64,000 nt of DNA, taken from the IMG/VR virus record IMGVR_UViG_3300020178_000002, positions 62,001-126,000 of that record; one strand, given 5' to 3'. Below the pieces are notes generated by a model. The model was given only the letters and a program-made list of their open reading frames with translations, was not told the DNA's origin and made no database searches. Of this stretch, positions 13,089-58,028 are shown piece after piece (the stretch's first letter is position 1; every line of letters starts with the position of its first letter). Both the position numbers and the translations under genes were made by a program.

Positions 13089-13888
13089 TGGAAAACCAGA
13101 TTTTTAATGAGTCCTGTTTGGACACCATGAGCCGAATGGAAGACAACTCCATAGACTTAGTGGTTACTAGCCCTCCCTACGACAATCTTAGAAGCTACGA
13201 TAATGACGTAGATCAAACTTGGGGAGAGTCCGTTTGGAAGCCGATTATCTCAGAGTTGAGTAGAGTTCTAGCAGAAGGTGGGGTTATCGTTTGGGTTGTG
13301 GGAGATGCTACAATTGATGGTTCAGAGACAGGAAGCTCATTTAAACAAGCTCTCTATTTCATGGAGTGTGGACTTAACCTTTATGACACAATGATTTGGG
13401 AGAAAACAGGAACACCATTTCCTTCACAGGTGAGATACAATGGGATCTTTGAATATATGTTTGTTTTTTCTAAAGGCAAACCAAACACTTTCAACCCCTT
13501 AAAGAAGCCCAATAAGACAGCAGGCCAATACCGGAAGAATAGGACTTTCCGACAAAAAGACGGTGGGTTCTCGGAGGGTAAAGAGCTATCGGTTTCGGAA
13601 GAAAGTAATAGGAATAACATATGGGTCATTAAGAATGGCTTTAACAGGTCATCTAAAGATAAATATGCTTTTGACCATCCTGCCATATTCCCAGAAAACC
13701 TAGCTCACGATCATATTATCTCTTGGTCTAACGAGGGAGACTTAATTTACGACCCATTCTTAGGTTCAGGTACTACAGCTAAGATGTGCAAGATCACTAA
13801 GAGAAAATACATTGGATCAGAGATTAGTGAAGATTATTTCAAGATCGCACTTAAGAGGATCGAAGAAGCACAGGAGTATTTCTTTTAA
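13088..13888 (+). CDS. DNA N4-cytosine/N6-adenine methyltransferase, beta class
   Basis: TSPPY, HPAIFP, DPFLGSGTT, IGSEI. Confidence 0.93.
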   Translation: MENQIFNESCLDTMSRMEDNSIDLVVTSPPYDNLRSYDNDVDQTWGESVWKPIISELSRVLAEGGVIVWVVGDATIDGSETGSSFKQALYFMECGLNLYDTMIWEKTGTPFPSQVRYNGIFEYMFVFSKGKPNTFNPLKKPNKTAGQYRKNRTFRQKDGGFSEGKELSVSEESNRNNIWVIKNGFNRSSKDKYAFDHPAIFPENLAHDHIISWSNEGDLIYDPFLGSGTTAKMCKITKRKYIGSEISEDYFKIALKRIEEAQEYFF

Positions 13889-14691
13889 TGGAAAACCAGA
13901 TTTTTAATGAGTCCTGTTTGGACACCATGGGCAGAATGGAAGACAACTCCATAGACTTAGTGGTTACTAGCCCTCCCTACGATAATCTTAGAACCTATGA
14001 TAATGATGTAGATCAAACTTGGGGGGAATCCGTTTGGAAGCCGATTATCAAAGAGCTGGCTAGGGTTATCAAAGATGGAGGGGTTATCGTTTGGATTGTG
14101 AACGATGCAACAGTAGATGGTTCAGAGACAGGTTCTAGTTTCAAACAAGCCATTTATTTCATGGAGTGTGGGCTTAACCTTACGGACACTATGATTTGGG
14201 ATAAAGGGTCAAATGGTGCTGTAGGGAATAATAAGATTTATTGGCAGTCTTTTGAATATATGTTCGTCTTTTCTAAGGGTTCTCCTGCGACAATTAACTT
14301 AATAAAAGACAGGAAAAATAAGAGGGTAGAGAAGAAGAACAAGGGTACAAAAAGAATGAAAGATGGAGAGCTTATTCCCATCACAAAAGGGTCATACGGA
14401 GATTTCGGTAGGAGAACCAACATTTGGTCATACTTAACAGGCAGAGGACATTCAACTTTAGATGTGTATGCCTTTGAACACCCTGCTACATTTCCCGAAA
14501 ACCTAGCTCACGATCATATTGTTTCTTGGTCTAATGAGGGAGATGTGGTTTACGATCCATTCTTGGGTTCGGGCACTACAGCTAAAATGTCTAAGATGAC
14601 CAAGAGAAAATATATAGGGTCTGAGATTAGTGAAGATTATTTCAAGATCGCACTTAAGAGAATCGAAGAATCACAGGAATACCTATTTTGA
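13888..14691 (+). CDS. DNA N4-cytosine/N6-adenine methyltransferase, beta class (tandem paralogue)
   Basis: TSPPY, HPATFP, DPFLGSGTT; flanking domains near-identical to 13088-13888. Confidence 0.93.
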   Translation: MENQIFNESCLDTMGRMEDNSIDLVVTSPPYDNLRTYDNDVDQTWGESVWKPIIKELARVIKDGGVIVWIVNDATVDGSETGSSFKQAIYFMECGLNLTDTMIWDKGSNGAVGNNKIYWQSFEYMFVFSKGSPATINLIKDRKNKRVEKKNKGTKRMKDGELIPITKGSYGDFGRRTNIWSYLTGRGHSTLDVYAFEHPATFPENLAHDHIVSWSNEGDVVYDPFLGSGTTAKMSKMTKRKYIGSEISEDYFKIALKRIEESQEYLF

Positions 14692-18502: not shown

Positions 18503-18515
18503 TAGTCTCTTTATA
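18503..18515 (+). promoter_or_regulatory. Putative late promoter motif
   Basis: TAGTCTCTTTATA, 40 nt upstream of 18556. Confidence 0.6.
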
Positions 18516-18555
18516 GCCTCTTTAAAGAGAACAATTAACTTAAAAGGAAAAAGCT

Positions 18556-19041
18556 ATGAGAAGAATCACAGCATCCGAGAAAATCGCCCAGCTTGAAAAG
18601 AGAGTCGCTCAACTTGAAAAAGAAAGCTTTGACTTAAAGCAGATTCCAGATTGGCTCTTTGGAAGAGTGGATTCTAAAATGGAAGACCTTCATACACAAC
18701 TTAACTACAACTTCAAAAATCTTTTTGGAAACAAGGTTAAAATCACCTATCCTGTTAAACAACAGATCAAAAACCCTTTTAATGTTTCACAAGCTAAGTA
18801 TGTAGGTAAGCTCATTGTTGGTCGTGAACACATTAACTACACTGTTCTTGTTCTTAACAACTCTAAAATCCAACTCGAGGGACTCAACCCTTTCTCACCA
18901 GAGCAGTTCTATAAGTCTTCTAACTTTGTTTTCTACATCTCTAACAAGAAGGTTGTTTCTTCAAGAGACATTACCTCTGTTGCTTCTTTAGAAGCTATTG
19001 TAGATGCTATTGAAGCTAAGTACTCTCATATCTTAGCCTAA
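18556..19041 (+). CDS. Hypothetical protein with shared N-terminal leader
   Basis: MRRITASEKIAQLEKRVAQLEKES leader. Confidence 0.75.
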   Translation: MRRITASEKIAQLEKRVAQLEKESFDLKQIPDWLFGRVDSKMEDLHTQLNYNFKNLFGNKVKITYPVKQQIKNPFNVSQAKYVGKLIVGREHINYTVLVLNNSKIQLEGLNPFSPEQFYKSSNFVFYISNKKVVSSRDITSVASLEAIVDAIEAKYSHILA

Positions 19042-22504: not shown

Positions 22505-23851
22505 GTGTTGAAGATGACTACTAAGAAGAAAAAGATTAAAGAAAAGAAACAGCTTGCCTTTCAAAAAAAGTCAGCAGCCGCTTTTAGAGCTTTAGGGAGA
22601 GCTGTTTATAGACATAGGCACAAAGCTAGGAAAAAGTACCCTAGCAGGTCAAATGAGTCGTTTAAGAAAAGAGGTAGATGGCTTATCCGCTTTCTGGATA
22701 AAGAACCTAAGACCATAGAATTTCTTGATACCTTTATTGGAACAGAAGATATGAATCCTCGAACAAAAGGTTGGAGAAGAAAAGTCTTAGAGCTTCTCTC
22801 TCTTTACCTTTTAAACAAGATCACATTGAGAGAAGCCTCTAAACTATTTGTGCCTATAGCTGCTAAGTCTTATGAAGTTGTTGCTTTAAACAAACAGCAA
22901 AATAAGATTCAAAAAACATTGCCACCAGAGATCATGGCCTTTTTGCCTAGCTCTATTGTTGTAGAAGTAGACAAAAACAACAACATCAAGGGCATCAATG
23001 ATATGTTTGTAAATGATACATATACATTGAAGGAAAAAATAAAGACCCAGAAGAAGCTAGTTTACCGATACAACACTATTGTTAAGCAAGTAAAGAAAGA
23101 TATGAAATCCAGAGATGAGATTACTAAGCTCTGTGCTTTAGTTACTTCCATCATAATGGAAACAGGCATTAGACCTGGAAAGATTGGTAATAGTGCTGTC
23201 AAGATTATAGAAGACAAGAAGATAGAAGTAGAGACTTTTGGAGCTGTTTCTCTCAATGCAGACCATGTGTCTTTTGTTAAAGACAACTTTGCAGAATTAA
23301 AGTTTGTAGGTAAGAAGGGTGGCTTGAACACAGCATCTCTCAAAGACTCAGATGTGATCAAAGTTTTAAAAGACTATGTAGATAACTCATTGAAGTCTGG
23401 TTCTAAGTACATATTTACAACTAGAGATGGTGAACAGTTTGATTACAAAGACCTTTCAAGCTACTTTAGGAAGAACTTTAAGGGCTTTAAAATCACAGAC
23501 TTTAGAAAGCTAAGAGCTACTAGAACTGTTTTTGAGGTTCTTAAAGATGAAAGAAGAAATATGCTAGGCAGGATCAAAGAGATTGCGTCTGGTGAGGTTG
23601 AGTCTATCAAAGCTAAAGCTACCGAAGAGATTGTTAAAACAATAGAATTGGCTCACCAGCAGGCACAGGCTGCCTTGAGTCACATGGATTCAAGCACAAC
23701 TCAAGATGCTTATATTAACCCTCAGGTTCTCTTACGCTTCTTAAGCACTGCAAAGATAGAGTCTTCTTTTAGAGACTATATCATGCAAGGCAAAACAAAG
23801 TTCAGATTTGATCCTATGATGTTTGTTAAAGAAGCTGAGAAGCTGGCATAA
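22505..23851 (+). CDS. DNA topoisomerase IB
   Basis: Catalytic pentad in order: TGIRPG (R), FVGKKG (K), TDFRK (R), LSH (H), AYINP (Y). Confidence 0.85.
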   Translation: MLKMTTKKKKIKEKKQLAFQKKSAAAFRALGRAVYRHRHKARKKYPSRSNESFKKRGRWLIRFLDKEPKTIEFLDTFIGTEDMNPRTKGWRRKVLELLSLYLLNKITLREASKLFVPIAAKSYEVVALNKQQNKIQKTLPPEIMAFLPSSIVVEVDKNNNIKGINDMFVNDTYTLKEKIKTQKKLVYRYNTIVKQVKKDMKSRDEITKLCALVTSIIMETGIRPGKIGNSAVKIIEDKKIEVETFGAVSLNADHVSFVKDNFAELKFVGKKGGLNTASLKDSDVIKVLKDYVDNSLKSGSKYIFTTRDGEQFDYKDLSSYFRKNFKGFKITDFRKLRATRTVFEVLKDERRNMLGRIKEIASGEVESIKAKATEEIVKTIELAHQQAQAALSHMDSSTTQDAYINPQVLLRFLSTAKIESSFRDYIMQGKTKFRFDPMMFVKEAEKLA

Positions 23852-25008: not shown

Positions 25009-26430
25009 TTACTCTAAAGAAGTTCCTTTAATTTCTTTAATCTTATCAGAGATTTTTTTGAGGTACTTATCCGTAGTAGCCTCTATGCTTTTTAGTTCTA
25101 TACCTGTAAACTCAAAATACTGCATAGCTTCTTCATTATCTAATAGCTGTTTAGCTACCTCTGATGTACTGATTTCACCTTGGTAATTCTCACCTTCTTC
25201 ATTGGTTATATAGCACAAACAAAGCTCTCCTTGAGGGTTTTCCTTTGTGAAAACATAACATTTATCTCTGATATAGGTTGAGGAGCTAGGGTCTGATGGT
25301 TTGTAGCCCTCTCTCTTATCAATTTCCTCTAAGACTTTTTGAGCATGTTCAATAGGGTACTCTAAAAGCATACCTTCCATATACCCATATGGCTTAGTTC
25401 CAAGTACAAGATGTTTTCTTCCTGTGCTATATATGTTGAAAGACCTTGATAGGTTATTAACATGGCCTCTTCTCTTTTTTGTGATTAGCTCTGGAAAGAT
25501 AGGTTCATACATAAGAGAGCCATAGACGAAAACCTTTAGAGTGTTTTCATGTGGGGCCATTAGAGGAATGTCTAACTTATTTTTTTCTAGGTTTGACAGA
25601 GTGACTTCACCCTCATCATTTAGATAAATACGCTTAACACAAAACTTACATTTCTCTTTGCCCTTGAAGTGTTTCTCATAGCCCTCATAAATACTATCTT
25701 CATCTATTAGGATTACAGTCATTCTTTTATACACAGGGTCTAATATGATCTGATTAGAAGTGAACATATTGTCTGTCTTTCTAACCACATTAAAAGGATT
25801 ATGTATGTCCTTTATTCTTTGAGTATAAAGCTTTTTGACTAGATCCATTGGAGATCTTTTGTAGGATTGCATTGCTTTCAATGCAGTATTGTATCTCGTT
25901 TCAGAAGATTCCCTATCTTCACCCTCAAGGTAGCCTGCGTCTGGGTGTCTAATACCGTGATTAGTTCTAACAAAGTGTTTATCTGTAATCTCCTCAACCT
26001 TTGGAGAATGCAAGCTTGTTTGTTCTACAATAAAAGTGTTCTTACCATCCGTGATAATATTATGACCTCTAACACCATTCCTATGGTGTGTCATTACATG
26101 AAGTGCTTCTAAAAGAGAATTACACTCTAAAGCCTTTAGAAACCTCCAAGCATCTCCTGAGAATCTGTTTCTATCTCCAGGTCTTTTTTTCTTACCCTCT
26201 TTTTCATCAGAGATTACAGCAAGAGCAGCATTTGTTATTGCAATACCATGCTCATTAATGCCCTCTACCCAGCCCGATATAGTATCTTGGAAATAAAGTA
26301 TTTCAGTGCCATTTTCAGCCCTTACATGGTATATCTTAAAAGTAGGGACATAGTTCCTATCTCTATTTTTGAACACTATCTTTCTATTTCCTACTTCAGT
26401 GAGTGCAATCACACAAGCGTTTTTATCCAT
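25009..26430 (-). CDS. Fusion: Cys-type Ntn hydrolase + gamma-glutamylcyclotransferase (GGCT/ChaC-like)
   Basis: C6-VIAL, KNRDR, GINEHGI, RTNH (Ntn); VFVYGSLM, IDKREGY (GGCT). Confidence 0.75.
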   Translation of the reverse strand: MDKNACVIALTEVGNRKIVFKNRDRNYVPTFKIYHVRAENGTEILYFQDTISGWVEGINEHGIAITNAALAVISDEKEGKKKRPGDRNRFSGDAWRFLKALECNSLLEALHVMTHHRNGVRGHNIITDGKNTFIVEQTSLHSPKVEEITDKHFVRTNHGIRHPDAGYLEGEDRESSETRYNTALKAMQSYKRSPMDLVKKLYTQRIKDIHNPFNVVRKTDNMFTSNQIILDPVYKRMTVILIDEDSIYEGYEKHFKGKEKCKFCVKRIYLNDEGEVTLSNLEKNKLDIPLMAPHENTLKVFVYGSLMYEPIFPELITKKRRGHVNNLSRSFNIYSTGRKHLVLGTKPYGYMEGMLLEYPIEHAQKVLEEIDKREGYKPSDPSSSTYIRDKCYVFTKENPQGELCLCYITNEEGENYQGEISTSEVAKQLLDNEEAMQYFEFTGIELKSIEATTDKYLKKISDKIKEIKGTSLE

Positions 26431-27975: not shown

Positions 27976-27981
27976 TTTATT
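27969..27981 (+). promoter_or_regulatory. Putative late promoter motif
   Basis: TATCCATTTTATT, 38 nt upstream of 28020. Confidence 0.45.
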
Positions 27982-28019
27982 GTCCTTTGTCTTAGGCATC
28001 ATTAAAAAAGAGGTATATA

Positions 28020-28868
28020 ATGAATAAAATATCAACACAAGAAATTAGAAAGCTTGAAATTAGGATAGCAAGGTTAGAGAAGGAGTCCAAGATTCTTGAT
28101 TGGTTGAAGTCTATCCCTATAAACCTACTCTCTAAGATTCAAGACTCCTTTGGAGAAATTTCTTCTCTTTTAAAGCTTACCTTAAAAAAGAATAAGGAAA
28201 GTATCTTAGAGGGCTTAGTTAAGTTCTTAGAAGTTAGAGTCAGCAGTGCATTAGATAAATCTCTTATGTCTGGATACCCTATTAGGTTTTATATCACTAA
28301 TTTTGACCCAAACAATCCTATGAACTCTGAAGCCCAGCTTATGGTTAAAGAAGTAGGTGGTGAGTTAAAATCTTATGAAGCTACTATCCGAGATATGCCA
28401 TCAATGCTTAAAGATGTTGAGGGTCTACCCCCTAGCATAGATAAAGATATTAAAGGTGCATATATTTCATGGTGGAAAGACTTTGAAGAAGAACTAAAAA
28501 TGCTTCGTGAAGGAAGGATGAGTAGGTCTACGGATTTGAAATCTTTCTGGAACAGAATCAAAGGTGCAAGTAAGTTTCTTTACAGGTTCTTGAGAGTTGT
28601 CTACAGCTTTAAATGGGCTTATGAAGTGTTCTCTTTAGTTGTGATGTTTACAACCCTAATGCCTTTGGCAGAAGTTGCACCAGAAAGAGGGAAGACCCTC
28701 ACTTATCTAGGTGTTGGTAAGATGATCTTAAACATATTTGAAAAGGTTCTTCGCAGAAGAAAAGTAAATATGGATCTCTTTGATGAGCTTGCAGCTAAAA
28801 AAGCATCTTCTCACCCTTACCCATATTGTAATAGCTTAGTCTCTCATTACGAAAGGGTTTGCAAGTGA
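28020..28868 (+). CDS. Leader-bearing membrane protein (paralogue of 29547-30425)
   Basis: IRKLEIRIARLEKES leader; GAYISWWKD; RRRKVN...KKAS tail. Confidence 0.75.
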   Translation: MNKISTQEIRKLEIRIARLEKESKILDWLKSIPINLLSKIQDSFGEISSLLKLTLKKNKESILEGLVKFLEVRVSSALDKSLMSGYPIRFYITNFDPNNPMNSEAQLMVKEVGGELKSYEATIRDMPSMLKDVEGLPPSIDKDIKGAYISWWKDFEEELKMLREGRMSRSTDLKSFWNRIKGASKFLYRFLRVVYSFKWAYEVFSLVVMFTTLMPLAEVAPERGKTLTYLGVGKMILNIFEKVLRRRKVNMDLFDELAAKKASSHPYPYCNSLVSHYERVCK

Positions 28869-29494
28869 GGCAACTAACAGCATCACAGAAAATCGCTATC
28901 CTTGAGAACAGAGTAGCTCAACTTGAAAAACAAGCAATGCTTGAAAGCATCTTAGCTAAGATAAAAAGCAAGTTGTCCCGATTCAAGCCCCTTAAGGTAG
29001 CTCAACATGTGGCCAAAGACTCTAAAATGACAGTGGGGAAGTTTGAAGCCTTAGCAAAAGCGAATCCAAAGGAACTTAAAGAGTTAAAGAAAGCTGTGAG
29101 GTCTTCTAATCCTCAAACCTCTATTTTAAAGCTATTAGACATTTACAATAATAAAGAAAATGCAATCTATTTGAAAAGTGTATATGGGATAGATCTTGAG
29201 TCTCAAGAAAGAACAAAGAATGCAAGGAAGCTAGTTCAGCTCAACAGTCTGCCTGACTTTGCTCTCTATTTTGGTAGTATCATAGCCTTTTTTATTTGTG
29301 ATTTCGTTGTTGAGCTTTTATTTGACTATCTCCTTGAACTGATAGCTGAAGATCTCGAGAAATCAGACAATGTATTCAGGAAACTTAAACGTGCTTGCCT
29401 CTACTTGATCTTAGCACCTACTATGGGATTACACATACTACTTTCTGGGATCAAAGAAGGGCTGAAAGCAATGAACCCTTTTGCGTTTTTTTAA
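28865..29494 (+). CDS. Leader-bearing membrane protein
   Basis: GTG start overlapping the upstream TGA; RQLTASQKIAILENRVAQLEKQA leader; two C-terminal TM segments. Confidence 0.75.
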   Translation: MRQLTASQKIAILENRVAQLEKQAMLESILAKIKSKLSRFKPLKVAQHVAKDSKMTVGKFEALAKANPKELKELKKAVRSSNPQTSILKLLDIYNNKENAIYLKSVYGIDLESQERTKNARKLVQLNSLPDFALYFGSIIAFFICDFVVELLFDYLLELIAEDLEKSDNVFRKLKRACLYLILAPTMGLHILLSGIKEGLKAMNPFAFF

Positions 29495-29507
29495 TAACTG
29501 TTTTATA
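29495..29507 (+). promoter_or_regulatory. Putative late promoter motif
   Basis: TAACTGTTTTATA, 39 nt upstream of 29547. Confidence 0.55.
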
Positions 29508-29546
29508 GTCCACACCACTTTAGACAAATCGAAGAAAGAATAAACC

Positions 29547-30425
29547 ATGAGACAACTAACAGCATCACAAAAAATCGCTATTCTTGAGAACAGAGTGGCT
29601 CAACTTGAAAAGCAAGCAATCATTCAAATGATTAAGAATCTGGGAATGAACTGGTTTAAACCTCTAATTGCAGCAGCTCAAGACCTTGTGTCCACTTTCA
29701 AGGGGTCAATTATAAGTAATAGAGATACTTTTGCTTCTGCTGCTGAAATGAACTTACAGGCGAGACTGACCGAAGCTCTCCAAAGAAATATGTTTTTTGG
29801 GAAAACCACATCAATAAGTGTTGAAAAATTTGATGCTAAAAACCCAGTAAACTCTGTTTTGAAAGTCTCCTATTCTGTAAATGGAGAACCCAGGTTTCTT
29901 GATTTCACTCTGAGTTCTGTACAGAAAATTAGAGAGATTGACAGTAAAACCCAAAAAGACATTATGGGAGCATATGTTTCATGGTGGAAAGATTGGGGTG
30001 ATTCTCTGGATATTGTAATCAATGGCAAATCTCCATCAAAAAGTATGGTTCAGAGCGTAATTGATTTTTTCTCTAGGAAGTTTAAGTTCCTTGGGAGATT
30101 GCTTTCTGCACTAGTTAAATTTGGAACAAAAATAAGAACCCTAACCCTGATCCCTACTTTAGTAGCATCTTTAATAGTTTGCCTTTGTGGACCTCTCGGC
30201 CTAGTTGTTGGTAGTACTGTAGCTATGAACCAAATTGGGTTAATGACACTACCAAAAGTTGTAGACATGATTCTTAAGATGATTGAGGGTGCTTTCAGAA
30301 GAAGAAAAGTAAACATTGATAAGTTCAATGAAATAATTGGCAAACAAGCATCTGTGAATAAGTATGCAAGTAAATACCCACACACATATTCTATGTTATT
30401 AAGACTTGAGGGTGCTGGAGTCTAA
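29547..30425 (+). CDS. Leader-bearing membrane protein (paralogue of 28020-28868)
   Basis: MRQLTASQKIAILENRVAQLEKQA; GAYVSWWKD; RRRKVN...KQAS. Confidence 0.75.
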   Translation: MRQLTASQKIAILENRVAQLEKQAIIQMIKNLGMNWFKPLIAAAQDLVSTFKGSIISNRDTFASAAEMNLQARLTEALQRNMFFGKTTSISVEKFDAKNPVNSVLKVSYSVNGEPRFLDFTLSSVQKIREIDSKTQKDIMGAYVSWWKDWGDSLDIVINGKSPSKSMVQSVIDFFSRKFKFLGRLLSALVKFGTKIRTLTLIPTLVASLIVCLCGPLGLVVGSTVAMNQIGLMTLPKVVDMILKMIEGAFRRRKVNIDKFNEIIGKQASVNKYASKYPHTYSMLLRLEGAGV

Positions 30426-30426
30426 T

Positions 30427-31053
30427 ATGAACCAGAGAGACATAAAGAATATCAGAGAAGATCTTGATCGAATTGAAAGTAAATACCAAGTCTTAGGGAG
30501 TGCTATGAACAACCCTAAGTACAGTTGGAACTTCTATTCAATTGAAGATCTTAAAGACATCCTTAAAGAGGTTGATTCTTTCCATAAAGCAGATCTTCAA
30601 AAAGCACAGTCTTGGGCTAATATAGAGCTTAATAGAATATCTACTCCAGGTAGCTTTGGGATTGATCAACTTAACTTTGGATGGCATGACCTTATTTACA
30701 AAACAAATAAGGTTTTGATGATCAAAGAATATCTCCCTGAACTTATTAAAAAAAGAGAGCGAGATAGAGATGAAGTTCTTGAGGACATCAAAGATGTAAG
30801 AGAGCTTGTTGCTAAATCATACGAAAGCGACAGTGATCCTTTGGTTAGATTAAGTCTTGAAAGACTCACTAAGAAGATAACAAGACTCAAACCAGTATTT
30901 AAAGATGTCACTGAAGAAATGAGCGAGTTAAAAAGAGACTTAGAGAGGGCTCAAGAGTTCCTACCTAAAGTTAAAAATAAGCTTAGAAAGTGGTTTAGGT
31001 TAGCAGACCAACAAGCTAGTATAAGAGTGGCTAGTAGACACCTCAAAAAATAA
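30427..31053 (+). CDS. Coiled-coil protein with C-terminal QASIRVASRHLKK tag
   Basis: GGAG RBS before ATG 30427. Confidence 0.65.
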   Translation: MNQRDIKNIREDLDRIESKYQVLGSAMNNPKYSWNFYSIEDLKDILKEVDSFHKADLQKAQSWANIELNRISTPGSFGIDQLNFGWHDLIYKTNKVLMIKEYLPELIKKRERDRDEVLEDIKDVRELVAKSYESDSDPLVRLSLERLTKKITRLKPVFKDVTEEMSELKRDLERAQEFLPKVKNKLRKWFRLADQQASIRVASRHLKK

Positions 31054-31118: not shown

Positions 31119-33719
31119 ATGTTTAATGATATGCTTGCAGAGCTACTCAGACCTACAATCAACCCAAAAGGTTGGATGAAGGACTGTGAGCTACTACTAG
31201 GAACTGAAAGTAATCTTGAAGAATGTATTCAAGAATGTATGAATGCACCTGATGGTGTGTATGGCTTAGACCTTGAAACAACAGGGTTAGACAATCGTGT
31301 ATTTAATGGTGTCACCAGAGACAAGATTGTGGGTGTCTGTCTTGCCCCTCATAAAGATAAAGGCTACTACTTCCCTCTTGCCCATGCGGAGGGGTCAAAA
31401 CACAATATCTCATGGAGAGTTATGGGGGATGCCCTCAAGCGTTTGTTTGATCTTGAAGTAAAGTCAGACCCTGTGTTCCATAATGCTTCTTTTGACCAAG
31501 AGTTTCTTGAGTTCAATGGGTATGTAGACAGGCTAGGCAAAGAGAGATGGGACAATCAAAAGAGGTGGCATGATACGCTTATTATCAAGTATCTTCTCAA
31601 CCCAAGAGAAAAGGGTGGTCGTGGTTTAAAGCATCTTTCTAAAGTATTGCTTGAAAGAGAGATGATTGAGCTTGAAGACCTAATGCCAGATGCTGTGGAT
31701 AAAAACTATTCTACTTTAGACCCTAGCTGGGATCCCTGTGTTTTATATGCATCAGCAGATGCCATGAACACAGTTGGAATCTTCAACATTCTGAACAAAG
31801 AGTATGAAGAAGATACAGCTCACACTAAGTTCATCTACAACCTTGAGAAGAAAACTTTGTTATGTACTCGTTGGATGATGAGGAATAGGGTTCATGTAGA
31901 CAGGAAAACAGCACTCAAGTTTTGTCAAGAGGGTCAAGAGCTTTGGTTCAATGCATTGCTTGAAGTATATGAGGGTGCTAAAGACATACTTGGTCGAGAC
32001 ATTACTCCAAACTATGTTCGTATCTTAAAAGGTGACATTAAAGGTCTGAATCTTTTCAACCACATGGAAGTAGAGGGTGCAAGCTATAAGACTCGAGTGG
32101 ATGAAGCTCGTAAGGAAGCAAACAGACTACACCCAGACACAAAAGAAACTATCACTAAGCCTGTTAAGAGGTTAAGTAGCGATAAGTTTAAAAAGGCAGA
32201 AGGCTTTGAAGATGTAGACTTCCCTTTAACCTATGATATTCTTTCACCTCAACAGTTAGGTCTGTTGTTTAGAGAGTTAGATGTTCCAGGTCTGATGGTC
32301 ACGGAGAAGTCTGGTCAAGTAGCGACAGGGAAAGATGCTATTGATTCTGTGATTGAGGAAGCCTCTGAGGGATTCCCATTCATGGCAAAGATTAAAACCT
32401 TCCGAGAGCTTGGTAAAGCATTGGGTCAGTACCTTATTCCATTCGTAGAAGATGTAGGTCCAGATGGCACACTCAAACCTAAGTTTGATCAGTTTTCTGC
32501 TGACACAGGTCGCTTTTCTTGCAAGACAAACAGTAGACCTTGGAAAGTCAAAGATGGTGGTTGTCGTGTACCATTTCAAGGTATTCCAGCCACCTATGAC
32601 AAGAACAAGCCTAAATGCATATCTAAAATGAGACAGTGTATCTCTGTAAGGGATGACAACTATTGGTTAGCGGCCATTGACTATGCAGGTGTGGAATTAA
32701 GGTTGGTGACTAACCTATCTAAAGAGCCTAAGTGGATTGATGCTTTCTTCTCTTGTTCTGAATGTGGAAAGAAATATCAGCAAGAGCTTGGTGACGATGG
32801 CTTTGTTATTGCACCACCAAGTCTTTGTTCATGTGGTTCAGATAAGATTGGTGATCTTCACACAGGTACTGCTGTTGCTTTCTATGGAGAGGGTTCAAAG
32901 AAGCAAGACAATTGGAAAGTCCTTCGTGGTAATGGTAAGGCTTGTAATTTTGCCCTTTGTTATGGTGGTACAGGCAAGGCTGTTCAAAGGTCTATTGGCT
33001 GTGACGCTAAAGAGGGTGATGAAAAGTACAGAGTCTTTACCAAGACTTACTCTGGACTTACAGGTTGGTGGTCTCAACAACATAAGTTTGCTCGAAAGGC
33101 AGGTTATGTGAAAACTGCTATGGGCAGAGTACAGCCTTTACCAGACATCAACTCTGATCAGTTTAGGTTTAAGAGTAAAGATGAACGAAAGGCATTGAAC
33201 GGACCGATTCAAGGAACAAGTGCAGATGTTACCAAGTTAGCTATGGCTCTCATTTATGAGAATGTCCAAAAGCGAGGTTGGGAAGATAAGCTGTTAATGG
33301 TTTTAACAGTCCATGACGAAATTGTATTTGAGATCCACAAAGACATTCTTAAAGAGGCTATTGAAATGATTTCAGACCTTATGACTAAGAACAATGTGGT
33401 TCAAAAAATGAATTGGCCTATTCCATTACTTGTAGACGTTGAGTTAGGTAAGGATTGGACTGTTCCTTATGACTTGAAGGACATTATGCAAGCAGATGGA
33501 GACCCAGAGCTTGTTAAAATATTTGAGGGAGAGAAGCCTGAAGAGGTTGTCGAGACAGTAGAAGCTGTGGAAGTACCTACTATTTTAACATTTGAGGTAT
33601 TGAGCCTTGATGAAGAAACAGCAGATAAAATTGCTGAGTGGATTAAAGAAAGAAAACTACTCAATGATGAGTGGGATGTGTCCTACGAGGGCAGATCAGT
33701 AAAAGTATTATTTGAATAA
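31119..33719 (+). CDS. polA: DNA polymerase family A with 3'-5' exonuclease
   Basis: LDLETTG, FHNASFD, YASADA (exo); TGRFS, DYAGVELR, GKACNFALCYG, NGPIQGTSAD, TVHDE. Confidence 0.95.
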   Translation: MFNDMLAELLRPTINPKGWMKDCELLLGTESNLEECIQECMNAPDGVYGLDLETTGLDNRVFNGVTRDKIVGVCLAPHKDKGYYFPLAHAEGSKHNISWRVMGDALKRLFDLEVKSDPVFHNASFDQEFLEFNGYVDRLGKERWDNQKRWHDTLIIKYLLNPREKGGRGLKHLSKVLLEREMIELEDLMPDAVDKNYSTLDPSWDPCVLYASADAMNTVGIFNILNKEYEEDTAHTKFIYNLEKKTLLCTRWMMRNRVHVDRKTALKFCQEGQELWFNALLEVYEGAKDILGRDITPNYVRILKGDIKGLNLFNHMEVEGASYKTRVDEARKEANRLHPDTKETITKPVKRLSSDKFKKAEGFEDVDFPLTYDILSPQQLGLLFRELDVPGLMVTEKSGQVATGKDAIDSVIEEASEGFPFMAKIKTFRELGKALGQYLIPFVEDVGPDGTLKPKFDQFSADTGRFSCKTNSRPWKVKDGGCRVPFQGIPATYDKNKPKCISKMRQCISVRDDNYWLAAIDYAGVELRLVTNLSKEPKWIDAFFSCSECGKKYQQELGDDGFVIAPPSLCSCGSDKIGDLHTGTAVAFYGEGSKKQDNWKVLRGNGKACNFALCYGGTGKAVQRSIGCDAKEGDEKYRVFTKTYSGLTGWWSQQHKFARKAGYVKTAMGRVQPLPDINSDQFRFKSKDERKALNGPIQGTSADVTKLAMALIYENVQKRGWEDKLLMVLTVHDEIVFEIHKDILKEAIEMISDLMTKNNVVQKMNWPIPLLVDVELGKDWTVPYDLKDIMQADGDPELVKIFEGEKPEEVVETVEAVEVPTILTFEVLSLDEETADKIAEWIKERKLLNDEWDVSYEGRSVKVLFE

Positions 33720-33729
33720 GGAGGGACAA

Positions 33730-34503
33730 ATGAAAGTTGAATTAGATGGTGGAAATATCACACTTTATCATGGAGACTGCACCGAAGTATTGAAGTCCCT
33801 ATCTCCAAACAGCGTAGAGGTTGCAGTTACATCACCTCCTTATAATCTTCACCTTGAGGGTGCTGAATACTCCAAATCTAAAACCGCTATGGCATGGAAT
33901 AAGAAGTATGAAGATTGGTATGATGACAATATGTCAGAGTGGATGTATCAAGGGTGGCAACAAAGCGTAGTGCATGAACTGGTGAGAGTTTGTAGAAGTA
34001 GCGTATTCTACAACCACAAGATCAGATATGCATACCATCCTCGCAACAAAGAAAGAAACCTTACAAACATATACCACCCTATGGATTGGCTGAACAAGTT
34101 TCCTATCTGGTGCGAAATCATCTGGGATAGGTGTGGTATAGGTCACCCCTGTGGTCGGTATCACATCCAGACCGAAAAGATCTATCAGATAGGCAAACCT
34201 TGTAAATGGGATAACAAAGATGGTCTGACCAACATTTGGAAGATCCCTCCATCAAAGAATAAAGGTCATGTGTGTACCTTCCCAGAAAAGCTGGTGGACA
34301 ACTGCATATTACCTACGACAGAAAAAGGTGACATAGTGATAGATCCTTTTCTGGGGTCTGGTACTACTGGGGTAGTCGCTGTTCAAAGAGGTCGTAAATT
34401 CATCGGGATAGAGAAAAATGAAAAGTTTTTTGAATTAGCTCTAAAAAACATAGAGGACGAGATTAAGAAAAGAGATTCATCTCTGTTCTTCTATGAGGGC
34501 TAA
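33730..34503 (+). CDS. DNA N4C/N6A methyltransferase, beta class
   Basis: TSPPYN, HVCTFP, DPFLGSGTT; start ATG 33730 after GGAGGG. Confidence 0.92.
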   Translation: MKVELDGGNITLYHGDCTEVLKSLSPNSVEVAVTSPPYNLHLEGAEYSKSKTAMAWNKKYEDWYDDNMSEWMYQGWQQSVVHELVRVCRSSVFYNHKIRYAYHPRNKERNLTNIYHPMDWLNKFPIWCEIIWDRCGIGHPCGRYHIQTEKIYQIGKPCKWDNKDGLTNIWKIPPSKNKGHVCTFPEKLVDNCILPTTEKGDIVIDPFLGSGTTGVVAVQRGRKFIGIEKNEKFFELALKNIEDEIKKRDSSLFFYEG

Positions 34504-34813: not shown

Positions 34814-35122
34814 ATGACAGATAGTTTTAAAGATGAGATAGAACTTCATGCGGAAGAAAATGGGCTTTCATACCATGATGCAATCTTGGATTTGGTAGCT
34901 AAAGAAAACATGATGAGTAAAGACAGAGTAATTGCTGTGGGTTTCAGCACTCATAAAGCAATGTCTCACCTGATATACAATACATGGTCTGACTTTAGGT
35001 CTTTTTCTTTAGCTTTTAATAATCTCATTCTGGCTAAATATGTTAAGCCTGCAAGATATAATAGGACTATTAGTCAAAGTTCAATGAGAAGTCTTTACAT
35101 GAACGCTAAAAGAGCAAATTAA
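34814..35122 (+). CDS. Hypothetical protein
   Basis: ORF coupled to the upstream gene. Confidence 0.6.
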   Translation: MTDSFKDEIELHAEENGLSYHDAILDLVAKENMMSKDRVIAVGFSTHKAMSHLIYNTWSDFRSFSLAFNNLILAKYVKPARYNRTISQSSMRSLYMNAKRAN

Positions 35123-35763
35123 GTTCTCTCATACTTTATAATTTCATCTACAAGGCCAAGCTCAAGGCACTTCTCTGGGTTCATCCACAGATCCCTTTTA
35201 AGAAGTTCTTTGAGCTTTTTCTTTTTGAGCTTGGTGTGCTTCAAGTAGATAGACTCTAACATTTCCATGAGTGAGTCCATAGATTCTTTCTCATCTACAA
35301 GATTCCCATAAGTACCCCAGACACCTGTACTTACTTGGTGAATAAGCATAAAGCTGTGTTCTGTGATGTGTCTTTGAGCACCAACACAAGACATGATAGT
35401 TGCAGCACTCGCAGCAGATCCTTCTACATAAGTGAAGACAGGAACTTCTGATTCTAGGATATGACTAGCACCAGCAAGTCCTGAGAATGCACACCCACCA
35501 CCAGAGTTTATGTGTAAGTGGATAGGTGGGATAGAGGGTAGGCTTAGGTCAGTCATAAGATTAACAATCTGTTGACCTACACTCCTGATAGCAATCCCAA
35601 CTTCCATTACAGACTTTGGGGTGATGTCTGCATAGAGGTAAATGTGGTTATCAGAGATAGTGATGTCACCTTGGTAATTACCCTCTTGAGAACCTGCATA
35701 TACTTGTCCCTCTGAGTTTTCATAAACTCTGCGGTTTGTTGGTCTGTTTAGATACTTATTCAT
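35119..35763 (-). CDS. clpP: ClpP-like (S14) serine protease
   Basis: INSGGG, AASAA (Ser), MLIHQ (His), RDLWM (Asp), LGLVDEI; GAGGTG RBS at ATG 35763. Confidence 0.88.
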   Translation of the reverse strand: MNKYLNRPTNRRVYENSEGQVYAGSQEGNYQGDITISDNHIYLYADITPKSVMEVGIAIRSVGQQIVNLMTDLSLPSIPPIHLHINSGGGCAFSGLAGASHILESEVPVFTYVEGSAASAATIMSCVGAQRHITEHSFMLIHQVSTGVWGTYGNLVDEKESMDSLMEMLESIYLKHTKLKKKKLKELLKRDLWMNPEKCLELGLVDEIIKYERT

Positions 35764-45129: not shown

Positions 45130-46464
45130 ATGAGTAAATACAACGCTATAAGAGAAGAGAATGAAAAGTTTAATGCATGGATTCTTGAAGAAGAAGAGGC
45201 AGGTGGCTTCTTTGATCCTATAGAAGAAAGAAAAGTTAGGTTTTTTAATGAACTGAGTGAAGAAGGCAAGGAGAAAGCATACGAAGAATTTGAAGCTACC
45301 AAAGAAATCAAAGACATTAAAAGATATAGGGCTCTGGCATTTCAGGGCAAGCTTTTTGCTTTGCGGTGGTTGTTAAAAAGATCTAAGGATTTTGAAGAAT
45401 TTAAAGAGCCTTTAGAAAACAAAACCAAGAAATTAGATCTCAGTCCTAGTAAAGATCGAAGAACAAAAATCAAAGATATGACCCAGACCAAAGCAAGAGA
45501 CTTATACTTGGAAGATGTTATATTTGATGACTTAGACCTATCTTGGTCAGACTTCTCGGGTAGCACTCTAGTCAACTGTAGTTTTAATAACACAACACTG
45601 ACAGGTGCAAAGTTTGTAAACTGTTCTTTACAGATAGTAGACTTTGGTGGTGCAGACCTCACCTTAGTGGACTTCAAAAATGTGGATCTTCGAGCCACCA
45701 AGGACTTTGGTAAGGCAACAATTAAGCAAACCAACTTATCTGGTGCTGATGTTAGAGGTGTTGATCTAAGAGGTGCTGGAGAAAGTAAGGAAGATCTTTT
45801 CTATGTTAGTCCAACAACTAAATTTGATGTTACTAACAAAAAGCTGATTACTAAAGTGCCTATTTACATGGAGAAGTTTGATGTTCTGTTAAAAAACATA
45901 GAAGACCAAATCAATAAAGGAAAAGAAATTGGATATGATAAGTCTAAAGTCAAAGAACTAAAAAAATATCTTAATGAAAATACATTTAAGGTCTTCTATG
46001 GAGATAGGATATTAAAAGTACTAGACTACTACAAAAAAGAGCTTTCTTGGAGAAAACGCTTGCCAGATTCCTTTTTGCCTTTTTCTTATTCTTTTAAAGA
46101 CTTAAAGAAGTTCTTTAGGAACACTGACAGCCAAGTTAAGAATATGGTTAGCAAGATTAATCAAAAGATTGGCTCAAAGAGATATGTACTGACAGAGCCT
46201 GTTAATACTAACAGCCATACTAACAGATTAAAGGGCAAGATAGTCTATGGGGGAAATCTTTTAGGTTTATCTCAAACAGTGCCCTATTACATAATTGTAA
46301 ACATTGGAAATTCTGGCTTTGGCCTTAGAAGATTTTATACACCAGAGTCTTATATCTTCTGCATACCTCAAAAGAGTTGCTCATCCGAATTTGAAGAATT
46401 TGGTCAAAGAGAGCTAGGTACTATTGTTATGAAGATAGAAGACTTAATCTGGAGAGAACGTTAG
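45130..46464 (+). CDS. Pentapeptide-repeat protein with extra N- and C-terminal domains
   Basis: LDLSW SDFSG STLVN CSFNN TTLTG AKFVN...ADLTL VDFKN VDLRA; AAGGAG RBS. Confidence 0.85.
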   Translation: MSKYNAIREENEKFNAWILEEEEAGGFFDPIEERKVRFFNELSEEGKEKAYEEFEATKEIKDIKRYRALAFQGKLFALRWLLKRSKDFEEFKEPLENKTKKLDLSPSKDRRTKIKDMTQTKARDLYLEDVIFDDLDLSWSDFSGSTLVNCSFNNTTLTGAKFVNCSLQIVDFGGADLTLVDFKNVDLRATKDFGKATIKQTNLSGADVRGVDLRGAGESKEDLFYVSPTTKFDVTNKKLITKVPIYMEKFDVLLKNIEDQINKGKEIGYDKSKVKELKKYLNENTFKVFYGDRILKVLDYYKKELSWRKRLPDSFLPFSYSFKDLKKFFRNTDSQVKNMVSKINQKIGSKRYVLTEPVNTNSHTNRLKGKIVYGGNLLGLSQTVPYYIIVNIGNSGFGLRRFYTPESYIFCIPQKSCSSEFEEFGQRELGTIVMKIEDLIWRER

Positions 46465-46928
46465 TACTGATATAAAGCCATGATCTTTTGACGCTGGCGA
46501 GGTGTTCTAACGCTATTTTTGACGATAGTTTTAATGTTCTGGATGATGAATTTAGGGTTTTCAGAAGAGAAGTTAGGCACTACCACTAAATTAAATTGTT
46601 CTCTGGTGTATATACTTGTTAAGTAAACCCTTAGTAGGTCTTGCTCCTTATCAAGCTCTACATTAATAAACATAAGTTGTTGTCTATCATTTTTGATATG
46701 ACCTCGTGCCTCTAATTGGTATATTTTATTGGGCTTTTTGATGTAGCCATCATCACCTTTGGTGTTTGCAAGACCATAGTCTACCAGAGCATCTCCTGTT
46801 CCGTTAGCTATTGCCTTAAGGGTTTCTTTAATTTTATCTCCAAAAATGTCAAATAGTCCAGCTTCTTTTTCAAGCCTGGCGATTCTCATTTCAAGAGATC
46901 TGATTTGTTGTGCTGCTGTTCTTCTCAT
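46461..46928 (-). CDS. Hypothetical protein with shared N-terminal leader
   Basis: MRRTAAQQIRSLEMRIARLEKEA from ATG 46928 (AGGA RBS). Confidence 0.75.
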   Translation of the reverse strand: MRRTAAQQIRSLEMRIARLEKEAGLFDIFGDKIKETLKAIANGTGDALVDYGLANTKGDDGYIKKPNKIYQLEARGHIKNDRQQLMFINVELDKEQDLLRVYLTSIYTREQFNLVVVPNFSSENPKFIIQNIKTIVKNSVRTPRQRQKIMALYQY

Positions 46929-46969
46929 TTTACGTTTTCCTATCTGATAAAGATTCATTCCTTGTGGGA

Positions 46970-46982
46970 CATAAAAGACATA
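46970..46982 (-). promoter_or_regulatory. Putative late promoter motif
   Basis: TATGTCTTTTATG, 41 nt upstream of 46928; 12/13 identical to 45066. Confidence 0.55.
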
Positions 46983-57671: not shown

Positions 57672-58028
57672 CTATAACGTAAAAGTAAGGTGTAAAAGAG
57701 AGCCTTTCTTTTTGTATGATAAAGTGTAGCCTTTTGGTGCAACGACACGCAAACCTTTTGCTTCCTGCTTTAAGAACACCTCTCCTACAAAAGAGCTTGA
57801 GCCAGAGCTAGTAAAACAGTCTTTAATCAGTAGTGTGTTTCCTTGCTTTTCATAAGTGACCCACTCTATAGGCTCATTGAAAGAGAGTATGATTGATATA
57901 GTCTTATCAGCAGAGACACGAACTGCCTCTGGGATAGTATATAAATAATTCTCATCAATACACCCAACCTCGGCTAAACTAACAGATAGAGGGAGAATTG
58001 TAAGTATGCAACATAGTAAATACTTCAT
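57672..58028 (-). CDS. Exported protein with signal peptide
   Basis: MKYLLCCILTILPLSVSLA-E. Confidence 0.6.
   Translation of the reverse strand: MKYLLCCILTILPLSVSLAEVGCIDENYLYTIPEAVRVSADKTISIILSFNEPIEWVTYEKQGNTLLIKDCFTSSGSSSFVGEVFLKQEAKGLRVVAPKGYTLSYKKKGSLLHLTFTL

What the first reader, a model, noticed from the sequence alone, without database searches (positions are those of the whole stretch)
28865..29620. The leader has been swapped as a DNA cassette: identity ends exactly at the KQA boundary
Seen: 28865-28938 and 29547-29620 are near-identical over about 74 nt (about 6 mismatches: the start base, otherwise synonymous). Identity ends just after CAAGCAAT (K-Q-A), yet the two bodies are unrelated. 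Conversely 28020 and 29547 have homologous bodies (GAY[IV]SWWKD, RRRKVNxDxF) but more divergent leaders. Inference: leader and cargo evolve independently, so new cargo is recruited by recombining a tag module onto it, and synonymous-only divergence implies purifying selection on the peptide.
Basis: partly seen in the sequence, partly recalled or inferred. Interest (0 to 1): 0.8.

Follow-up and report, generated by a model that had tools for sequence, protein, structure and literature searches.

The report
Exchangeable address tag on giant-phage proteins
Two neighbouring genes of an uncultured 312-kb salt-marsh/marine phage begin with the same 24-residue helix although the rest of the proteins are unrelated; the same helix heads at least 169 other protein families in related giant phages and behaves as a movable address tag, most likely (not shown) for loading proteins into the virus particle.

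Summary
Codons 1-24 of the genes at 28865 and 29547 encode the same peptide (MRQLTASQKIAILENRVAQLEKQA). They differ only in the start base and five synonymous sites, against about 13 expected from codon usage (P=3.5e-4). Similarity collapses at codon 25, and the two bodies show no profile-level homology.

The leader is not local. Five genes in the window carry it. So do 169 protein clusters in public metagenomes, at residue 1 in about 95% of cases, nearly all on large phage contigs. None was found in cultured phages or in 185,579 bacterial and archaeal genomes, and Pfam, PHROGs and the literature do not hold it.

Shuffling is supported in four ways:
- Leader type is incongruent with the body tree (AU p=5e-5).
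- Leader flavour follows the phage lineage rather than the cargo.
- A relative carries a mosaic paralog with near-identical ends and a saturated core.
- One tagged cargo has leaderless homologs in cultured phages.

Function is inferred. I read it as an amphipathic, leucine-zipper-like N-terminal targeting or pro-peptide, analogous to the T4 capsid-targeting sequence. A ClpP-like head-maturation protease lies 5 kb away. Packaging and cleavage are untested, and a retained docking helix is the main rival.

The parts
28865..28936 (+). 24-codon leader of the 209-aa gene (GTG start overlapping the stop of the upstream gene)
28865..29494 (+). Leader gene B: leader, helical region and two hydrophobic segments near the C-terminus; member of a 43-protein body superfamily
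29547..29618 (+). 24-codon leader of the 292-aa gene, identical peptide to 28865-28936
29547..30425 (+). Leader gene A: leader, alpha/beta core (residues about 59-160), hydrophobic region and a conserved C-terminal tail
28020..28868 (+). Leader gene A0: body paralog of 29547 with a divergent 23-residue leader (28020-28088, MNKISTQEIRKLEIRIARLEKES)
18556..19041 (+). Fourth leader gene (leader 18556-18627); soluble 161-aa body unrelated to the others
46461..46928 (-). Fifth leader gene. The leader Met at 46928 (leader 46860-46928) is the likely start, not the upstream ATG at 46958
29502..29510 (+). Promoter-like TTTAT(N)GYC element 37 nt before the leader ATG. Equivalent elements lie at 18510-18518 (+), 27976-27984 (+) and 46968-46975 (-)
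35122..35763 (-). ClpP-like serine protease matching phage head-maturation protease families; candidate processing enzyme (link to the leader is inferred)
30427..31053 (+). Conserved 208-aa coiled-coil protein directly downstream of the array (context; role unknown)

Best explanation
SHOWN (about 0.85-0.9 confidence). The repeat is the coding sequence of a discrete 23-24-residue N-terminal module, consensus M-R-x-(L)-T-A-S-Q/E-x-I-x-x-L-E-x-R-V/I-A-x-L-E-K/R-Q/E-A/S. It is under strong purifying selection. It has been joined many times to unrelated protein bodies in a lineage of uncultured giant phages from marine, estuarine and salt-marsh samples. Recombination at the conserved gene ends moves bodies and leaders relative to each other.

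INFERRED (about 0.45). The module is an address tag. It would form a short amphipathic, leucine-zipper-like helix that docks each tagged protein onto one shared partner made by the phage. The most likely partner is the scaffold or interior of the assembling head. The tagged proteins would then be packaged as internal or ejected proteins, and the tag would be removed at its conserved K/R-Q/E-A/S end by the ClpP-like head-maturation protease encoded 5 kb downstream. This is the logic of the T4 capsid-targeting sequence on its polymorphic internal proteins.

The cargo set evolves fast and is mostly of unknown function. In this phage it is mainly small proteins with C-terminal membrane-type segments, as expected for proteins that meet the host on entry.
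For: Module anatomy:
- Information content is 2.3-4.3 bits at positions 1-24, except the two solvent-facing positions 12 and 15. It falls to 1 bit or less at position 25 (n=160).
- The leader sits at residue 1 in 156 of 165 proteins. The internal cases each start with Met and look like fused tandem genes.
- The a/d positions (I10, L13, V17, L20, A24) are hydrophobic and the e/g positions are E or R. AlphaFold models residues 6-31 as a helix.
- Type II leaders are followed by S/T/G-rich linkers and soluble cargo.

Spread:
- Five genes in the window and at least one more on the same 312-kb contig.
- 169 clusters at 50% identity.
- 44 IMG/VR loci, including contigs of 143-376 kb.
- No hits in 185,579 species genomes or in 50,697 phage records.

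One shared partner: leader flavour tracks the phage lineage across unrelated bodies (2.97 vs 4.72 differences, 0 of 20,000 permutations as extreme).

Modularity.

Protease: phrog_94 'head maturation protease', E=2.5e-39, conserved in relatives.

Precedents:
- T4 internal proteins share only a capsid-targeting sequence (PMC3012670).
- SPN3US gp53 and gp54 have identical N-termini on diverged bodies.
- SPN3US gp47 is a processed ejection protein with a transmembrane helix (PMC5694885).
Against: - There is no virion, proteomic or cleavage evidence of any kind.
- The leader genes lie among replication and DNA-modification genes, not head genes. No capsid, portal or scaffold gene was recognised in the window.
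- The ClpP-like protein could have another role.
- The leader end does not match the Glu-directed sites of T4, phiKZ or SPN3US proteases.
- In families A and B the predicted helix runs on past residue 24, and hydrophobic periodicity continues. That suits a retained coiled coil as well as a cleaved tag.
- Membrane-type cargo is unusual for head contents.
Confidence: 0.45

Rival explanations
1. Retained docking or oligomerisation helix. The leader is not cleaved. It is a two-heptad zipper through which the tagged proteins bind each other or a hub protein in the infected cell, for example a membrane-associated assembly built from the membrane-type members that recruits the soluble ones.
For: - The heptad core has E at e positions and R at g positions, which is self-complementary for parallel pairing (inference).
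- The helix and amphipathic periodicity continue past residue 24 in families A and B.
- 48 of 50 close relatives carry hydrophobic segments.
- The lineage-specific leader flavour fits any shared partner.
Against: - An oligomerisation helix has no need to sit at residue 1, yet 95% do.
- Non-core positions (T5, A6, S7, K22, Q23, A24) are as conserved as the core. That points to recognition of the whole peptide, including its ends.
- Type II leaders are set off from cargo by flexible linkers.
- In the broad set only 24 of 115 proteins have hydrophobic segments.
Confidence: 0.25
2. Recognition tag for timed proteolysis or chaperoning. The N-terminal peptide would be a degron or adaptor site that hands a class of accessory proteins to the ClpP-like protease, with a host unfoldase, or to a chaperone. 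It would not serve packaging.
For: - The tag is strictly N-terminal.
- A ClpP-family protease is conserved 5 kb away.
- Weaker matches of that protein to 'ATP-dependent protease' PHROGs exist.
Against: - The best matches of the protease, by more than 20 orders of magnitude, are head-maturation proteases.
- No phage unfoldase was recognised.
- A 24-residue, fully conserved helix is much more than known N-degrons need (established knowledge; not tested here).
Confidence: 0.08
3. The conserved unit is a nucleic-acid element rather than a peptide: a translational operator or enhancer, an RNA structure, or a recombination site.
For: Across 21 distinct leader DNAs from several lineages, codons 2-11, 13 and 20 are nearly fixed. 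These include codons that are rare in this genome (CTA, TCA, ATC). Codons 14, 18, 21, 22 and 24 vary freely. Neighbour-dependent codon usage does not explain this.
Against: - Substitutions are overwhelmingly synonymous.
- Leader synonymous divergence between orthologs is not lower than in the bodies.
- There is no consensus RNA structure, and folding z-scores are near 0.
- The 5' untranslated regions differ between copies, and the 28865 copy has none of its own.

At most this is a secondary constraint on the first 30 nt.
Confidence: 0.05
4. Plain duplication and divergence. All leader proteins would be one ancient paralog family whose N-terminus simply evolves slowest, with no module exchange.
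For: - 28020 and 29547 are true paralogs.
- Weak similarity continues to about residue 45 between 28865 and 29547.
- There is a marginal profile alignment, E=0.05.
Against: - Profile comparison of the two body families gives probability 1%.
- The leader-type/body-tree incongruence has AU p=4.7e-5.
- The paralog in L004 is a mosaic.
- Leaderless homologs of a tagged body exist in cultured phages.
- Bodies range from 37 to 402 aa, with and without membrane segments.
Confidence: 0.05

Closest known systems
T4 capsid-targeting sequence (CTS) on the internal proteins IPI/IPII/IPIII and relatives
   Same: A short conserved N-terminal peptide is the only shared part of otherwise unrelated, highly polymorphic phage proteins. 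There are several per genome, and a head protease is encoded by the phage. The logic is one tag and many interchangeable cargos (PMC3012670; PMC5694885).
   Different: - No sequence similarity: no T-even hit among 50,697 phage records.
- 23-24 residues here against 10-20.
- Zipper-like heptads.
- The tag end is K/R-Q/E-A/S, not a Glu site.
- The protease here is ClpP-like.
- Packaging and cleavage are not shown here.
- Many cargos carry membrane-type segments.
Processed head and ejection proteins of giant phages phiKZ, 201phi2-1 and SPN3US (e.g. gp53/gp54, gp47)
   Same: The setting is a giant phage. Paralogs have identical N-termini on strongly diverged bodies. An ejection protein has a propeptide and a transmembrane helix.
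   Different: Their propeptides end at A-x-E or S/A/G-x-E and are often more than 100 residues long. Here A-S-E occurs in only 51 of 160 leaders, and it sits at positions 6-8, not at the module end. There is no detectable homology.
Encapsulation peptides of bacterial microcompartments and cargo-loading peptides of encapsulins
   Same: A terminal amphipathic helix of about 18-24 residues, set off by a linker, addresses diverse cargo to the inside of a protein shell (established knowledge). The anatomy here matches.
   Different: No microcompartment or encapsulin shell gene was recognised in the window ORFs scanned. The carriers are giant phages, so the shell would be the phage head.
Polymorphic effector systems with a conserved N-terminal trafficking part and swappable C-terminal part (CDI/Rhs-type toxins, MIX/FIX effectors, double-glycine bacteriocin leaders)
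   Same: A conserved leader is paired with variable cargo. Genes lie in tandem arrays, and recombination at conserved borders creates mosaics.
   Different: No secretion apparatus, toxin or immunity domains, or GG cleavage motif were found. The module is found only on phage contigs.

Membership tests
T4-type capsid-targeting sequence / internal proteins | Short conserved N-terminal peptide shared by otherwise unrelated, polymorphic proteins of one phage | tested here: met
   Identical 24-residue leader on non-homologous bodies. Five copies in the window and 169 clusters overall.
T4-type capsid-targeting sequence / internal proteins | Relatedness to the T-even CTS, and cleavage after Glu by a gp21-type prohead protease | tested here: not met
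   tblastn of the leader against 50,697 phage records found no T-even hit. The leader ends in K/R-Q/E-A/S. The protease in the window is ClpP-like.
T4-type capsid-targeting sequence / internal proteins | Tagged proteins are inside the prohead or virion, and the tag is removed at maturation | not testable with these tools
   Needs particle proteomics with N-terminal mapping.
phiKZ/SPN3US-type processed head proteins | Propeptide ends at A-x-E or S/A/G-x-E | tested here: not met
   Positions 6-8 are A-S-Q in 102 of 160 leaders and A-S-E in 51 of 160. No such motif sits at the module boundary. Motif definition from PMC5694885.
Microcompartment encapsulation peptide / encapsulin cargo-loading peptide | Terminal amphipathic helix plus linker on diverse cargo | tested here: met
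   Heptad pattern and information profile, predicted helix at residues 6-31, and S/T/G-rich linkers after type II leaders.
Microcompartment encapsulation peptide / encapsulin cargo-loading peptide | Dedicated shell genes (BMC-H/T/P or encapsulin) in the same locus | tested here: not met
   No such Pfam family among the window ORFs scanned. Not every ORF was scanned.
Sec/Tat/lipoprotein signal peptide | Basic n-region followed by an uninterrupted hydrophobic h-region | tested here: not met
   The leader alternates charged and hydrophobic residues and has no hydrophobic run.
Double-glycine bacteriocin/RiPP leader | GG/GA/GS cleavage motif, small core peptide, C39-peptidase exporter | tested here: not met
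   There is no Gly at the leader end. Bodies have a median of 158 aa and reach 402 aa. No C39 hit.
Parallel leucine-zipper coiled coil | Heptad repeat with hydrophobic a/d and charged e/g positions | tested here: met
   I10, L13, V/I17, L20 and A24 at a/d; E14, R16, E21 and Q/E23 at e/g. There are only about two heptads, and the oligomeric state is not testable here.
ClpP-like phage head-maturation protease (ORF 35122-35763) | Profile match to the family and serine-protease core motifs | tested here: met
   phrog_94 E=2.5e-39. PF00574 on the orthologs. GSAAS and IHQ motifs are seen in the translation (motif identity is from general knowledge). Its role in head maturation, or on the leader, is not tested.

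The most novel reading that the evidence does not exclude
A cosmopolitan clade of uncultured giant phages uses one universal, recombination-portable 24-residue sorting signal. With it the phages send a large and fast-turning repertoire of proteins to a phage-built compartment: at least 169 families, including membrane-anchored ones. The compartment could be the head interior or something not yet described. This would be a viral protein-sorting system with its own receptor and processing enzyme, unrelated in sequence to any known tag.
Probability: 0.35. Interest if true: 0.8.

Novelty: new variant of a known kind. Interest (0 to 1): 0.65.

Why it matters
If the leader is a packaging or sorting tag, it identifies in one step the whole set of proteins that these uncultured giant phages deliver or co-localise. 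These are dozens of families with no annotation. They are likely to be entry factors, host-takeover factors or counter-defence factors.

It would show that the 'one tag, many cargos' design of T4 arose independently, with a different peptide and a different protease family. It would also offer a compact natural tag for loading foreign proteins into large capsids.

The mosaic genes give a clear natural example of how conserved gene ends act as recombination handles to exchange cargo between phages.

Even if the mechanism differs, a 24-residue peptide conserved across 169 or more unrelated proteins, and absent from every curated library, needs explaining.

Tried and rejected
- Pfam and PHROGs on the three array genes, on 121 leader proteins and on 10 type II cargos. 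There were no functional hits, only unknown-function PHROGs on some bodies.
- Literature search for the peptide strings: none found.
- blastn and tblastn against cultured phages: no leader found.
- AlphaFold model of the 29547 protein, then Foldseek against PDB and BFVD: nothing below E=0.001.
- ESM Atlas on three leader proteins: only unnamed viral clusters at chance-level scores.
- Conserved RNA structure in the leader: rejected.
- Neighbour-dependent codon bias as the cause of the fixed codons: rejected.
- Concerted evolution within a genome: not seen. Paralog leaders are no closer within a genome than between genomes.
- Recognising capsid, portal or scaffold genes among the large unknown ORFs with PHROGs, Pfam and PDB sequence search: failed.
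- Literature on cleavage sites of ClpP-type prohead proteases: nothing usable.
Full report
OBSERVATION

- Both encode MRQLTASQKIAILENRVAQLEKQA.
- 66 of 72 bases agree. The six differences are the start base (GTG vs ATG) and five synonymous third positions.
- The pair is the longest direct repeat in the region, 81 nt at 90%.
- From codon 25 on, only one of the next 16 codons gives the same residue.
- If the same peptide were encoded twice independently with this genome's codon usage, 13.3 +/- 2.3 codons would differ. Five do (P=3.5e-4). The two copies therefore share DNA ancestry beyond what selection on the peptide alone would give.
- BLASTP finds nothing between the two proteins after about residue 45.
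- 28020 and 29547 are full-length paralogs (27% identity, E=2e-30) with leaders only about 10/24 identical.

GENE MODELS

- The 28865 gene starts at the GTG, which overlaps the stop of the 28020 gene (GTGA). Its ortholog in a relative has ATG at that position, with the same overlap.
- Each of the four transcription units that carry a leader has a TTTAT(N)GYC element 36-39 nt before the leader Met. The motif is not enriched in the window as a whole (13 found, 14 expected). Four hits at a fixed distance from the four leader starts cannot be chance.
- A similar TTTATA element precedes many other genes at -35 to -47, so this is a variant of the phage's general promoter.
- The element implies that the ORF listed from 46958 really starts at the leader Met at 46928.
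- RNA-library contigs from salt-marsh metatranscriptomes cover 28395-28702, 28791-28987 (across the 28020/28865 junction) and 29987-30189 at depth 2-3. This is weak evidence of expression, because DNA carry-over cannot be excluded.

HOW FAR THE LEADER REACHES

- A profile of the leader finds five genes in the window: 18556-19041, 28020-28868, 28865-29494, 29547-30425 and 46461-46928 on the minus strand.
- The window belongs to a 312,136-bp IMG/VR contig. That contig holds at least one more copy outside the window (L018). A contig fragment from the same sample series (L011) holds four within 6 kb.
- A 48-column leader profile, searched exhaustively against 1.84 billion cluster representatives, finds 169 clusters at E<=0.001.
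- The leader is at residue 1 in 156 of 165 proteins. The exceptions begin with Met and look like fused tandem genes.
- There are two main flavours: a 24-residue MRQLTASQKIA type and a 23-residue MRRTASEVIRNLE type.
- Degenerate DNA patterns find 18 and 26 loci in IMG/VR, many on contigs of 143-376 kb. They find none in one genome for each of 185,579 bacterial and archaeal species.
- No cultured phage has it. Pfam, PHROGs and the paper library do not hold it.
- The phage occurs in salt-marsh, estuary and marine metagenomes.
- Its DNA polymerase is nearest (44%) to an uncultured 485-kb phage.

THE BODIES

- Without their first 24 residues, the proteins fall into separate families. Family A (29547, 28020) and superfamily B (28865, 43 members) are the largest. 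The 18556 and 46928 bodies stand alone.
- Profile-profile comparison of A and B gives probability 1%, E=0.05.
- A model of the 29547 protein (pLDDT 66) has three parts. The leader is helix 6-31. A confident alpha/beta core spans about residues 59-160. The hydrophobic C-terminal part is of low confidence. It matches nothing in PDB or BFVD.
- Close relatives of A and B nearly all have one or two membrane-type segments (48 of 50). In the broad set only 24 of 115 do, and none of 43 type II proteins does.

TESTS OF SHUFFLING

(a) Selection. Leader pN is 0-0.04 and pS 0.07-0.56, so the peptide is under strong purifying selection.

(b) Tree incongruence. On a maximum-likelihood tree of family A bodies alone, the MRQLTAS-type leader occurs in two separate places. 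P0007 groups with P0128 (support 84/96), which carries another leader type. The strongly supported sisters P0131 and P0136 (100/99) also carry different leader types. A tree that holds the MRQLTAS-type rows together is rejected (AU p=4.7e-5). I named the group after seeing a first tree, which weakens the p-value somewhat.

(c) Lineage flavour. Among proteins with unrelated bodies, leaders differ at 2.97 of 24 positions within a phage lineage and at 4.72 between lineages (0 of 20,000 permutations as extreme). One lineage has H15/I17 on three body families. Another has H3 on four. All copies in a genome therefore follow something they share: a common partner, or exchange among copies. The rows are not phylogenetically independent, so the p-value is indicative only.

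(d) A mosaic caught in a relative. L004 (90% relative) has an extra family A gene between the orthologs of 28865 and 29547.
- Against its neighbour it is 85-92% identical in the 60 nt upstream and 87-93% in codons 1-30.
- It is 40-60% identical in the core, with third positions at about 40%, which is saturation.
- It is 96-100% identical in the last 50 codons, with third positions 47/50.
- The duplication junction keeps the first 17 nt of the downstream gene.

(e) A tagged protein with leaderless relatives. The 205-aa L045 protein is leader, 17-residue linker, then a domain that stands alone as the 151-aa gp13 of Microbacterium phage PiperSansNom and phrog_8582.

(f) Limits.
- Leader dS between the two window copies is about 0.4.
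- Leader dS between orthologs is not lower than in the bodies.
- Paralog leaders are not homogenised within genomes.

The 28865/29547 join is therefore old, and exchange is episodic.

AN UNEXPLAINED DETAIL

Across 21 distinct leader DNAs, codons 2-11, 13 and 20 are almost fixed, including codons that are rare in this genome. Codons 14, 18, 21, 22 and 24 vary freely. Neighbour-dependent codon usage does not explain this. There is no conserved RNA structure. Some constraint on the first 30 coding bases, or repeated spread of the same DNA, remains possible.

HOW IT PROBABLY WORKS

Anatomy of the module:
- Positions 1-24 carry 2.3-4.3 bits each, except positions 12 and 15. The value drops to 1 bit or less at position 25.
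- Hydrophobic residues fall at heptad a/d positions, and E or R at e/g positions. The non-core residues T5, A6, S7, K22, Q23 and A24 are just as conserved.
- The module always sits at the very N-terminus and ends in K/R-Q/E-A/S.
- Type II leaders are followed by a flexible linker.

This is the anatomy of a terminal targeting peptide recognised as a whole by one partner.

Context:
- The carriers are giant phages.
- The cargos are small, unannotated, numerous, fast-evolving and partly arranged in tandem.
- A ClpP-like protein whose best matches are head-maturation proteases (E=2.5e-39) lies 5 kb downstream. It is conserved in the relatives.

Closest precedents:
- The T4 capsid-targeting sequence is the only shared part of the diverse internal proteins (PMC3012670).
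- SPN3US paralogs gp53 and gp54 have identical N-termini.
- SPN3US gp47 is a processed ejection protein with a transmembrane helix (PMC5694885).

I therefore favour a capsid-targeting pro-peptide, at confidence 0.45. The module and its mobility are shown. Docking, packaging and cleavage are inferred.

RIVALS

- Retained zipper (0.25). The tagged proteins would assemble with each other or on a hub in the cell. This fits the heptads and the helix that runs past residue 24 in families A and B. It does not explain the strict N-terminal position or the conserved non-core residues.
- Degron or chaperone tag (0.08).
- A purely nucleic-acid element (0.05).
- Plain duplication and divergence (0.05). 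The tests above speak against the last two.

COMPARISON AND NOVELTY

It works like the T4 CTS or a microcompartment encapsulation peptide. It is not a member of those families:
- There is no sequence relation.
- The length is different.
- There is no Glu-directed site.
- The protease family is different.
- No shell genes were found.

I rate it a new variant of a known kind. The tag itself, its breadth (169 or more families) and its restriction to uncultured giant phages appear to be undescribed.

MAIN LIMITS

- Only 64 kb of the 312-kb genome was available.
- No head genes were recognised.
- No experiment bears on localisation.

Noticed in passing
L004:9085-10070 (relative of window 29494-29547): An extra family A paralog is inserted as a complete unit: promoter, leader, body, tail and the first 17 nt of the downstream gene. 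The junction creates an in-frame upstream ATG. This explains the spurious 23-residue N-terminal extension of database protein P0002 (315 aa).
   Followed up: yes
window 29547-30425, last ~50 codons (and L004 paralogs): Family A proteins share a highly conserved C-terminal tail (RRRKVN.D.F ... K-Q/K-A-S ... YP). Between paralogs it is almost identical at synonymous sites. Its K-Q-A-S motif resembles the K-Q-A end of the leader and could be a second processing site. This is speculation.
   Followed up: partly
leader codons 2-11, 13, 20 (e.g. window 29550-29579): Codon choice is nearly fixed across 21 leader DNAs from several phage lineages, including codons that are rare in this genome. Other synonymous sites vary freely. 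Codon context and RNA structure do not explain it.
   Followed up: partly
window 30427-31053 (+): A 208-aa coiled-coil protein lies directly after the leader array and is conserved in relatives. Its N-terminus (…DIKNIREDLDRIE…) has a leader-like heptad pattern but does not match the leader profile. It has only a sub-threshold hit to a phage scaffolding family.
   Followed up: partly
window 46929-46958 (-): The first ATG of this ORF lies only about 9 nt after the promoter-like element. The leader Met, 30 nt further on, is the likely true start.
   Followed up: yes
window 22505-23851 (+): A 448-aa protein carries a eukaryote/poxvirus-type topoisomerase IB catalytic core (PF01028, E=4e-15), which is unusual in a phage.
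   Followed up: partly
window 25009-26430 (-): A 473-aa fusion of an acyl-CoA:6-APA acyltransferase-like (peptidase C45-type) domain with a ChaC/gamma-glutamyl cyclotransferase domain.
   Followed up: no
window 13088-14691 and 33712-34503 (+): Three N6/N4 DNA methyltransferase genes. The one after the DNA polymerase is present in L004 but absent at that position in L006.
   Followed up: partly
window 45130-46464 (+); L027:7051-7830: A pentapeptide-repeat protein abuts the leader gene at 46461-46928. Another pentapeptide-repeat gene sits near leader genes in a 296-kb relative.
   Followed up: no
L011, leader ORF about 560 nt downstream of the MRHLTASEKIA gene: A superfamily B paralog has a decayed leader (…ILEDKVAMLEIDL…) that has lost the LEKQA end. 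It may be a copy released from the constraint.
   Followed up: no
L027:9092-10004: A family A gene is split into 95-aa and 179-aa ORFs (frameshift, pseudogene or assembly error). In the same locus a C-terminal domain is fused to a B-type protein in some phages and free-standing in others.
   Followed up: no
window 58025-58618 (-): A 197-aa protein matches D5-like/HTH transcriptional regulator PHROGs (E=8e-28). It lies within a long minus-strand block of otherwise unannotatable genes.
   Followed up: no
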